A program made the position numbers and the translations under genes. A DNA stretch of 63,903 nt, filler included, from Octopus bimaculoides (taxonomy: Eukaryota), in the NCBI RefSeq assembly GCF_001194135.2. It is 8 parts of 8 records of this genome, joined end to end, with 100 filler letters (N's around TTAATTAATTAA, not from the genome) between each part and the next. Parts side by side here need not be neighbours in the genome. Positions count along the whole stretch, not along the records: positions 27,101 to 40,597 come from NC_068994.1; 7 more parts are not named here. One strand, given 5' to 3'. The notes beneath the pieces were generated by a model that saw only the letters and a program-made list of their open reading frames with translations, had not been told where the DNA came from and searched no databases. Shown piece after piece: positions 37,755 to 37,840 of this stretch (positions within the stretch are counted from its first letter, which is position 1; every line of letters starts with the position of its first letter).

Positions 37755-37840
37755 TTGGTAGGTTCTTCAGCACTGCCCCCTACAGGCTGGAAAACCTTCA
37801 GGGCCTCAAAGGATCTTACAAGTTTTTCAATTGTTGCCAT
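37755..37840 (-). CDS. HTT: Huntingtin coding exon 1 (MATIEKLVRSFEALKVFQPVGGSAEEPTK), N17 domain
   Basis: Manual translation matches human MATLEKLMKAFESLKSF...AEEP. ATG at 37840-37838; donor AA|GTAAGT at 37754, phase 2 as in human intron 1. An upstream AG acceptor with a pyrimidine tract lies at 37855-37856, so the exon spans 37755-37854. Confidence 0.95.

What the first reader, a model, noticed from the sequence alone, without database searches (positions are those of the whole stretch)
37755..37840. Mollusc huntingtin with a vertebrate-like N17 and exactly one CAG-Gln followed by Pro at the polyQ position
Seen: ATG...TTC CAG CCT encodes MATIEKLVRSFEALKVF-Q-P, and the phase-2 intron falls after EEPTK, where human intron 1 falls after EEPLHRP. 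The hydrophobic/NES face (I4, L7, F11, L14), T3, K6 and K15 are kept, while human S13, S16 and M8 are A, V and V. Known (from recall): vertebrates have 4 or more Q, amphioxus QQ, sea urchin NHQQ, and Drosophila has no Q tract, so the Q stretch is usually described as a deuterostome feature. Inference: N17 plus a single CAG codon may predate the protostome-deuterostome split, while S13/S16 phospho-regulation and the M8 sensor came later.
Basis: partly seen in the sequence, partly recalled or inferred. Interest (0 to 1): 0.75.

Follow-up and report, generated by a model that had tools for sequence, protein, structure and literature searches.

The report
Octopus huntingtin first exon, single glutamine
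This is the first coding exon of an octopus huntingtin gene: it keeps the vertebrate-like 17-residue N-terminal helix and has one glutamine where humans have the disease-causing repeat, an arrangement that turns out to be the common one in slowly evolving invertebrates rather than an oddity.

Summary
On the minus strand, 37840-37755 encodes MATIEKLVRSFEALKVF-Q(CAG)-P-VGGSAEEPT and ends AA|GTAAGT, a phase-2 donor. It splices to an 84-nt exon starting G-AAA-AAG-GAA (…K-KKEPLPSKKDK…).

Seven further in-frame exons follow. Together they give a 365-aa N-terminus that matches Pfam Htt_N-HEAT_1 (E 6e-72) and human huntingtin structures (E 4e-106). Intronic repeats match only Octopus vulgaris proteins, so the host is an octopod mollusc.

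Glutamine at residue 18 is not peculiar to this animal:
- **Protostomes with a single Q18:** Lottia, Biomphalaria, a spider, three mites, a mantis shrimp, a dragonfly and an ant.
- **Deuterostomes:** hemichordate, amphioxus and shark have QQ. Hagfish has one Q.
- **Parsimony:** on 20 named taxa, Q is the bilaterian root state.
- **Intron 1:** position and phase are shared with trout, Lottia, Biomphalaria and a dragonfly.

The codon itself varies (CAG or CAA), so the ancestral codon is unresolved. S13 appears only in chordates and S16 only in jawed vertebrates.

Conservation of N17 in a mollusc (Aplysia) was published in 2014, and these sequences are public. No cnidarian outgroup could be identified.

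The parts
37755..37840 (-). Coding part of huntingtin exon 1 (86 nt): MATIEKLVRSFEALKVFQPVGGSAEEPT plus the first two bases (AA) of a split Lys codon
   Evidence: aligned to human HTT residues 1-18 and to the EEP motif
37790..37840 (-). The 17 codons of the N17 amphipathic helix (MATIEKLVRSFEALKVF)
   Evidence: 11 of 17 residues identical to human; the same motif appears in 65 fetched huntingtin N-termini
37784..37789 (-). Gln18 (CAG, 37789-37787) and Pro19 (CCT, 37786-37784), at the position of the vertebrate polyQ tract
   Evidence: positional homology in the alignment
37850..37852 (-). In-frame TAA four codons upstream of the ATG, so no N-terminal extension is possible in this exon
37753..37754 (-). 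GT of the intron 1 donor (AA|GTAAGT), phase 2
   Evidence: same phase and place in Lottia, Biomphalaria, trout and dragonfly
36511..36594 (-). Exon 2 (84 nt): completes the Lys codon, then KKEPLPSKKDKMINCNVMADCICAPNM and the first two bases (CG) of the split Arg57 codon
33905..34025 (-). Exon 3 (121 nt): completes Arg57 with its first base (A), then [40 protein letters not shown]
32418..32557 (-). Exon 4 (140 nt), equal to vertebrate exons 4 and 5 fused: [46 protein letters not shown] and the first two bases (AG) of the split Arg144 codon
   Evidence: trout has two separate exons here, while Biomphalaria and the dragonfly have one
31374..31512 (-). Exon 5 (139 nt): completes Arg144 with its first base (A), then [46 protein letters not shown]
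30715..30856 (-). Exon 6 (142 nt): ALLKSFLPNLKSSSASTRRTAASSLSLICQHSHNPLSFINRLLIMLL and the first base (G) of the split Asp238 codon
29097..29284 (-). Exon 7 (188 nt): completes Asp238 with AT, then LILPVDEEHEVHYLLGVLLAIRNLIPYLTGPERDLGLKGSFGLVHKGSSEKHVKVNIRQILQ
27609..27804 (-). Exon 8 (196 nt): [42 protein letters not shown]...; the gene continues beyond the edge of the piece

Best explanation
The region is the first coding exon of the huntingtin (HTT) orthologue of an octopod cephalopod, transcribed on the minus strand.

The exon encodes the compact, probably ancestral form of the huntingtin N-terminus. It has four parts: a 17-residue amphipathic helix (N17), one glutamine and a proline that close the helix, a six-residue linker (VGGSAE) and an acidic EEP motif. 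It ends in a phase-2 split codon immediately before the basic KK[E/D] stretch that leads into the first HEAT repeats.

By homology with vertebrate huntingtin, the helix should mediate reversible membrane or vesicle association and CRM1-type nuclear export through I4, L7, F11 and L14. T3, K6 and K15 remain available for modification. There is no S13/S16 phospho-switch, because those positions are A13 and V16. These functional statements are inferred, not shown.

One CAG cannot slip, so the locus is not a repeat. Comparative data gathered here indicate that Q18 is the ancestral bilaterian residue. It was doubled on the deuterostome stem and lengthened in vertebrates. The vertebrate polyQ and proline-rich region are later insertions between residue 18 and the EEP motif.
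For: - **Gene identity:** there are eight in-frame exons with canonical splice sites. The product matches Pfam Htt_N-HEAT_1 at E 6.4e-72 and human HTT chains at E 3.8e-106, with N17 and EEP aligned. The best representative is Lottia gigantea huntingtin at E 2.9e-150.
- **Start codon:** an in-frame TAA lies four codons upstream. Transcript contigs of two related lophotrochozoans start at the same ATG, each with an in-frame stop four codons upstream.
- **Host:** the sequence falls in a clade with Lottia and Biomphalaria, bootstrap 91. The intronic repeat ORF hits only Octopus vulgaris among named proteins.
- **Q18 in protostomes:** Lottia QS, Biomphalaria QP, Stegodyphus QS, Tetranychus QA, Halotydeus QN, Tyrophagus QV, Oratosquilla QG, Ladona QL, Odontomachus QE.
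- **Q18 in deuterostomes:** Saccoglossus, Branchiostoma and Rhincodon have QQ. Myxine has a single Q. Teleosts have QQQQ.
- **Statistics:** 10 of 14 named protostomes have Q18, against a Q frequency of 3.1% at positions 19-32 (binomial 6e-13, not corrected for phylogeny). The Fitch root state is Q, with 5 steps.
- **Intron 1:** phase and position are conserved in Lottia, Biomphalaria, trout and dragonfly. A mite intron has the same phase at a slightly offset place.
Against: - No RNA evidence from this species was available, so the exon 1-exon 2 junction and the transcription start are inferred.
- An assembly gap (38033-38548) lies 193 nt upstream of the ATG.
- Lophotrochozoan sampling is thin: three named molluscs, one leech with N18, and two unnamed transcripts, one with H18.
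- No cnidarian, sponge or placozoan sequence could be named, so nothing can be said about the state before Bilateria.
- Q18 was replaced several times: tick E, firefly M, planthopper K, leech N, Ciona H. The site is therefore not strictly constrained.
- The codon differs between taxa (CAG or CAA).
- A simple hydrophobic-moment test on the 17 residues did not differ from shuffles.
- All functional statements about N17 are transferred from vertebrate work.
Confidence: 0.9

Rival explanations
1. Q18 in molluscs, arthropods and deuterostomes is convergent. On this view a polar residue simply tends to follow the amphipathic helix, glutamine arose several times, and the octopus Q has no historical link to the vertebrate polyQ.
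For: Residue 18 is variable in several lineages: E, M, K, N, H, S, T, L and I all occur. The codon is not conserved (CAG or CAA). The unnamed sequence that groups with Lottia has H18, with a Q two residues later.
Against: Q is the state in 10 of 14 named protostomes spanning Mollusca, Chelicerata, Crustacea and Insecta, and in 5 of 6 named deuterostomes. The alignment has no gaps between Met1 and residue 18. Q frequency in the next 14 positions is only 3%. The lineages that lack Q are the fast-evolving ones, with the lowest overall identity. Parsimony needs 5 losses against many more independent gains.
Confidence: 0.12
2. The ATG at 37840 is not the real start. On this view the true first exon lies upstream, for example in or beyond the assembly gap, and this ORF is only part of a longer N-terminus or an alternative first exon.
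For: The sequence just upstream (tttttattcattcag|attaatccagaatcATG) resembles a splice acceptor. A 516-nt gap lies 193 nt upstream. No transcript data were available for this species.
Against: The in-frame TAA (37852-37850) lies downstream of that possible acceptor, so any upstream exon would be non-coding. Every orthologue with an intact N-terminus begins at the homologous Met. This includes transcript contigs with 5' UTRs and in-frame upstream stops. The ATG has A at -3 and G at +4.
Confidence: 0.03
3. The piece is a huntingtin pseudogene or a partial duplicate rather than the functional gene.
For: Only the first eight exons are in the piece. The same-species protein was not recovered from the databases.
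Against: All eight exons are open and in frame, with canonical splice sites and 66% identity to Lottia over 357 residues. Exon lengths of 84, 121, 139 and 142 nt keep the frame as in other huntingtin genes. The absence is explained by that search missing all long proteins: it also missed Lottia P0040, the best hit.
Confidence: 0.03

Closest known systems
Aplysia californica huntingtin (ApHTT, XP_005093645; Choi et al. 2014, PMC4108396)
   Same: It is a mollusc huntingtin with a conserved N17 (reported as 12 of 17 residues identical to human), no polyQ tract, no polyproline region and conserved N-terminal HEAT repeats.
   Different: It comes from a different class (gastropod versus octopod). 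The published Aplysia qPCR primer is absent from the window. The paper does not discuss the single Q at residue 18 or the intron position.
Lottia gigantea huntingtin (V4AN43 / XP_009054232; P0040)
   Same: It is the best full-length match (66% identity over 357 residues, E 2.9e-150). Its N17 is MATIEKLIKAFEALKVF, followed by a single CAG-encoded Q18, and exon 1 ends AA|GT in phase 2.
   Different: Residue 19 is S rather than P (QSAPGG), and the linker before the split codon is three residues longer.
Human or vertebrate HTT exon 1 (N17-polyQ-proline-rich region)
   Same: It shares N17, a glutamine starting at residue 18, the EEP motif before the exon end, and a phase-2 intron directly before KKE. 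The intron was checked on trout genomic DNA. The human junction is from recall.
   Different: Vertebrates have 2 to more than 20 Q, and mammals add a roughly 38-residue proline-rich region. They also have S13, S16 and M8. The octopus has one Q, one adjacent P, and A13, V16 and V8. Vertebrate exons 4 and 5 are a single exon here.
Amphioxus and hemichordate huntingtin (QQ; Candiani et al. 2007, PMC2206037)
   Same: They share a conserved N17 and a very short glutamine run at the same position, with no proline-rich region.
   Different: They have two glutamines rather than one. The literature treats this QQ as the origin of polyQ and does not count the single Q of protostomes.

Membership tests
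Huntingtin (HTT) orthologues | N-terminal HEAT block recognised by Pfam Htt_N-HEAT_1 (PF20926) | tested here: met
   E 6.4e-72, 241 bits against a cut-off of 31.2, covering profile positions 1-151 of 152
Huntingtin (HTT) orthologues | Best matches are huntingtins, collinear from residue 1 | tested here: met
   Human HTT chains match at E 3.8e-106. Lottia huntingtin matches at E 2.9e-150 over residues 1-357. All named hits are huntingtin.
Huntingtin (HTT) orthologues | N17 amphipathic helix at the extreme N-terminus (M-A-T-x-E-K-L-x-K-x-F-E-x-L-K-x-F) | tested here: met
   MATIEKLVRSFEALKVF has 11 of 17 residues identical to human
Huntingtin (HTT) orthologues | Conserved intron 1: phase 2, directly before KK[E/D] | tested here: met
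   The window has AA|GT-...-AG|G. Lottia, Biomphalaria, trout and Ladona share the position and phase. Halotydeus shares the phase but has ISG between the split codon and KKD.
Huntingtin (HTT) orthologues | Full length of about 2,700-3,100 aa with bridge and C-terminal HEAT domains | not testable with these tools
   The piece ends after exon 8 (residue 365). The rest of the gene lies outside 27101-40597.
PolyQ-bearing huntingtins (deuterostome type) | Two or more consecutive glutamines after N17 | tested here: not met
   There is a single CAG at 37789-37787, followed by CCT
PolyQ-bearing huntingtins (deuterostome type) | Proline-rich region between polyQ and EEP (mammalian type) | tested here: not met
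   Only PVGGSA separates Q18 from EEP
Vertebrate-type regulated N17 | Phosphorylatable S13 and S16, and oxidisable M8 | tested here: not met
   The window has A13, V16 and V8. In the panel, S13 appears first in amphioxus, and S16 only in jawed vertebrates.

The most novel reading that the evidence does not exclude
Gln18 is an ancestral bilaterian residue of huntingtin, kept by selection on the amino acid (CAG and CAA interchange) as the cap of the N17 helix. The deuterostome polyQ grew from this pre-existing codon by duplication. Under this reading, the usual account that glutamines 'first appear' in echinoderms would need correcting, and the first glutamine would have a function that does not depend on tract length.
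Probability: 0.6. Interest if true: 0.4.

Novelty: new member of a known kind. Interest (0 to 1): 0.3.

Why it matters
The published narrative places the origin of the glutamines in deuterostomes and calls them uncommon in protostomes (Tartari 2008 as cited; Candiani 2007, PMC2206037; the review PMC8004120).

The panel assembled here shows that a single glutamine at exactly residue 18, usually with a proline within one to three residues, is the majority state in slowly evolving molluscs and arthropods. The polyQ tract therefore most likely grew from an existing, conserved codon rather than arising de novo.

This is a modest refinement. It gives a natural 'Q1' huntingtin exon 1 (N17-Q-P-linker-EEP, 29 codons) for structure-function comparison. 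It also dates the S13/S16 regulatory switch to chordates and jawed vertebrates.

It does not change understanding of the disease. It can be obtained from public sequences.

Tried and rejected
- **Word-indexed homologue search:** it returned only proteins of 627 aa or less and nothing above 68% identity. It missed all full-length huntingtins, including Lottia, so the same-species protein could not be retrieved. The exhaustive representative search was used instead.
- **Naming unnamed N-termini:** I tried to name P0001, P0002, P0024, P0042, P0044 and the P0082 group, and to find a cnidarian. The cluster look-ups and a profile search gave no cnidarian, annelid (other than the leech) or brachiopod names.
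- **Contig look-ups:** these failed for Branchiostoma. For the spider the gene was too long, so no DNA was returned.
- **Aplysia as the source:** rejected. The published ApHTT qPCR primer has no match within 3 mismatches, and N17 identity is 11 of 17 rather than the reported 12.
- **Hydrophobic-moment test of N17 against shuffles:** not discriminating, for either the window or the human sequence.
- **Rfam scan of the piece:** only sub-threshold matches in low-complexity repeats.
- **NJ placement next to Biomphalaria (bootstrap 76):** not taken as evidence for a gastropod. On identical columns the window is equidistant (73-76%) from Lottia, Biomphalaria, P0001 and P0002.

Full report
**What is in the sequence**

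The finding lies on the minus strand. Reading the reverse complement from 37840 gives ATG GCA ACA ATT GAA AAA CTT GTA AGA TCC TTT GAG GCC CTG AAG GTT TTC CAG CCT GTA GGG GGC AGT GCT GAA GAA CCT ACC AA|GTAAGT. This translates to MATIEKLVRSFEALKVF-Q-P-VGGSAEEPT plus two bases of a split codon.

There is one Gln codon, CAG at 37789-37787, followed by CCT. An in-frame TAA sits four codons upstream of the ATG. It lies downstream of a possible acceptor-like sequence, so any upstream exon would be non-coding. The ATG has A at -3 and G at +4.

**The gene**

Scanning the minus strand for open stretches showed unmistakable huntingtin peptides. With canonical AG/GT borders they assemble into eight exons:

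| Exon | Coordinates | Length (nt) |
|---|---|---|
| 1 (coding part) | 37840-37755 | 86 |
| 2 | 36594-36511 | 84 |
| 3 | 34025-33905 | 121 |
| 4 | 32557-32418 | 140 |
| 5 | 31512-31374 | 139 |
| 6 | 30856-30715 | 142 |
| 7 | 29284-29097 | 188 |
| 8 | 27804-27609 | 196 |

Exon 2 begins with G, so the split codon is AAG (Lys) and the junction reads EEPT-K-KKEPLPSKKDK.

The 365-residue product matches Pfam Htt_N-HEAT_1 at E 6.4e-72 and human huntingtin chains at E 3.8e-106. In that alignment N17 is matched residue for residue, and the EEP motif aligns with human AEEPLHRPKKE. An exhaustive search of 1.84 billion representatives put Lottia gigantea huntingtin first (E 2.9e-150, 66% identity over residues 1-357).

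The piece ends inside the gene, so the bridge and C-terminal domains could not be examined.

**Whose gene**

An NJ tree of the N-terminal region places the window with Lottia, Biomphalaria and an unnamed transcript, bootstrap 91. On identical columns it is about equally distant (73-76%) from each of them. That pattern fits a separate molluscan class.

The introns and upstream region carry several copies, in both orientations, of a short interspersed repeat. An ORF read through one copy hits seven proteins. Six are 'Hypothetical predicted protein [Octopus vulgaris]' and the seventh is an unnamed contig. The host is therefore an octopod cephalopod.

It is not Aplysia. The published ApHTT primer is absent.

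**Is residue 18 special?**

From the fetched proteins I collected every N-terminus with a recognisable N17 and named as many as the look-ups allowed.

| State at residue 18 | Taxa |
|---|---|
| Single Q | octopod window (QP); Lottia (QS); Biomphalaria (QP); spider Stegodyphus (QS); mites Tetranychus (QA), Halotydeus (QN) and Tyrophagus (QV); mantis shrimp Oratosquilla (QG); dragonfly Ladona (QL); ant Odontomachus (QE); hagfish Myxine (QS) |
| QQ | Saccoglossus; Branchiostoma; an echinoderm-like fragment (THQQ); whale shark |
| QQQQ | teleosts |
| Not Q | tick Ornithodoros (E); firefly (M); planthopper (K); leech (N); Ciona savignyi (H); unnamed transcript P0002 (H, with Q at 20) |

There are no gaps between Met1 and residue 18 in the alignment.

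Ten of 14 named protostomes have Q18. Glutamine makes up 3.1% of positions 19-32 in the same proteins, giving a binomial probability of 6e-13 (not corrected for relatedness). Fitch parsimony on the accepted tree of 20 named taxa gives Q at the protostome, deuterostome and bilaterian nodes, with five changes. The lineages without Q are those with the lowest overall identity.

**Codon and intron**

Genomic or transcript DNA was available for several relatives:

- Q18 is CAG in the window, Lottia, P0001 and Ladona.
- Q18 is CAA in Biomphalaria and Halotydeus.
- Trout has CAA CAA CAA CAG.

Selection therefore acts on the amino acid, and the ancestral codon cannot be decided.

Exon 1 ends in a phase-2 split codon directly before KK[E/D] in Lottia (AA|GT), Biomphalaria (AA|GT), trout (CA|GT) and Ladona (AG|GT). 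Halotydeus is also phase 2 (AT|GT) at a slightly different place. The human junction itself rests on recall.

**Regulatory residues**

Position 13 is A or G in molluscs, most arthropods sampled and the hemichordate, although firefly has S and the ant T. It is S in amphioxus, T in hagfish and S in jawed vertebrates. Position 16 is S only in jawed vertebrates. M8 together with S13 and S16 occurs only in jawed vertebrates, though M8 also occurs in the spider. T3, K6 and K15 are widely kept.

**Mechanism**

Shown: the coding potential, the splice structure, the orthology and the distribution of Q18.

Inferred from vertebrate work: the helix acts as a membrane-binding and CRM1-type export signal through I4, L7, F11 and L14, and Q18-P19 end the helix. 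Without S13 and S16 the phosphorylation switch is missing. A single CAG cannot expand by slippage.

The compact exon (29 codons) looks like the ancestral layout. The vertebrate polyQ and proline-rich region appear to have been inserted into it, between residue 18 and EEP.

**What is known already**

Choi et al. 2014 reported Aplysia huntingtin with 12 of 17 N17 residues identical to human, no polyQ and no polyproline. Candiani et al. 2007 described QQ in amphioxus as the earliest glutamines then known. A 2021 review states that only deuterostomes accumulated CAG at this place and that the triplets are uncommon in protostomes.

I recall, but could not retrieve, statements by the Cattaneo group that honeybee has a single Q. 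My searches found no paper that treats Q18 as ancestral to Bilateria.

**Verdict**

The object is an ordinary orthologue in an octopus genome. The evolutionary point is a modest correction to a textbook narrative and can be derived from public data.

Noticed in passing
window 31092-31274, 32764-32879, 35547-35663, 36971-37029, 39698-39879 (both orientations): There are about five copies of a short interspersed repeat with a (TCA)n/(ATC)n tail and a core ...TTCCATGCTAGCATGGGTTGGAC.... ORFs read through it match only 'Hypothetical predicted protein [Octopus vulgaris]' entries among named proteins. Those annotated proteins are probably repeat-derived artefacts. The repeat identifies the host as an octopod.
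   Followed up: partly
window 32141-32226 and 37368-37453; 35190-35336 and 36118-36264: Two further dispersed repeat families lie in the introns (79% and 74% identity between copies). One copy sits only about 300 nt downstream of exon 1, inside intron 1.
   Followed up: no
window 32418-32557: The regions encoded by vertebrate exons 4 (60 nt) and 5 (80 nt) form a single 140-nt exon here. The same is true in Biomphalaria and the dragonfly Ladona, while trout has two exons. This means either an intron gain on the vertebrate line or repeated losses in protostomes.
   Followed up: partly
window 37960-38032 and gap 38033-38548; gap 28155-28377: A (TG)n microsatellite runs into a 516-nt assembly gap only 193 nt upstream of the start codon, so the 5' UTR and promoter are incomplete. 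A second gap lies in the intron between exons 7 and 8. The 'inverted repeats' reported across 37993-38583 are an artefact of the N run.
   Followed up: no
P0046 (Myxine glutinosa huntingtin): Hagfish huntingtin begins MASMERLVKAFETLKAS-Q-SPSAG. This is a single glutamine in a vertebrate, whereas hemichordate, amphioxus and shark have QQ.
   Followed up: no
P0107 (Chromosphaera), P0106 and P0091 (choanoflagellates), P0087 (Soliformovum, Amoebozoa); Huntingtins of unicellular holozoans and an amoebozoan begin with an N17-like pattern: MAEKCLKAIDVL, MVDRLLRAIQSL, MDLVKALEVV. The N-terminal amphipathic helix may therefore be older than animals.
   Followed up: no
L003 (Biomphalaria pfeifferi JASAOG010000053.1), P0004: The deposited gene model is split. 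A 269-aa 'huntingtin' carries an internal read-through duplication ([34 protein letters not shown]). A separate 2,497-aa gene starts about 2.7 kb downstream. This looks like an annotation artefact.
   Followed up: no
window 34364-34588: Tandem copies with a period of about 43 nt (TATATCAGCTGCTATTTGACAGAAC...) lie in intron 2.
   Followed up: no
The word-indexed protein search returned no protein longer than 627 aa. It missed Lottia huntingtin, which was the top hit of the exhaustive search. Long proteins seem to be under-recovered by that tool.
   Followed up: partly
window 37757-37771 (AEEPT) and relatives: An acidic EEP motif just before the exon 1 donor recurs in human (AEEPLHRP), shark (SEEPG), spider mite (PEEPL), a tick-like transcript (GEEPL) and the octopod (AEEPT). 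It is a second conserved landmark flanking the site of the vertebrate polyQ and proline-rich insertion.
   Followed up: partly
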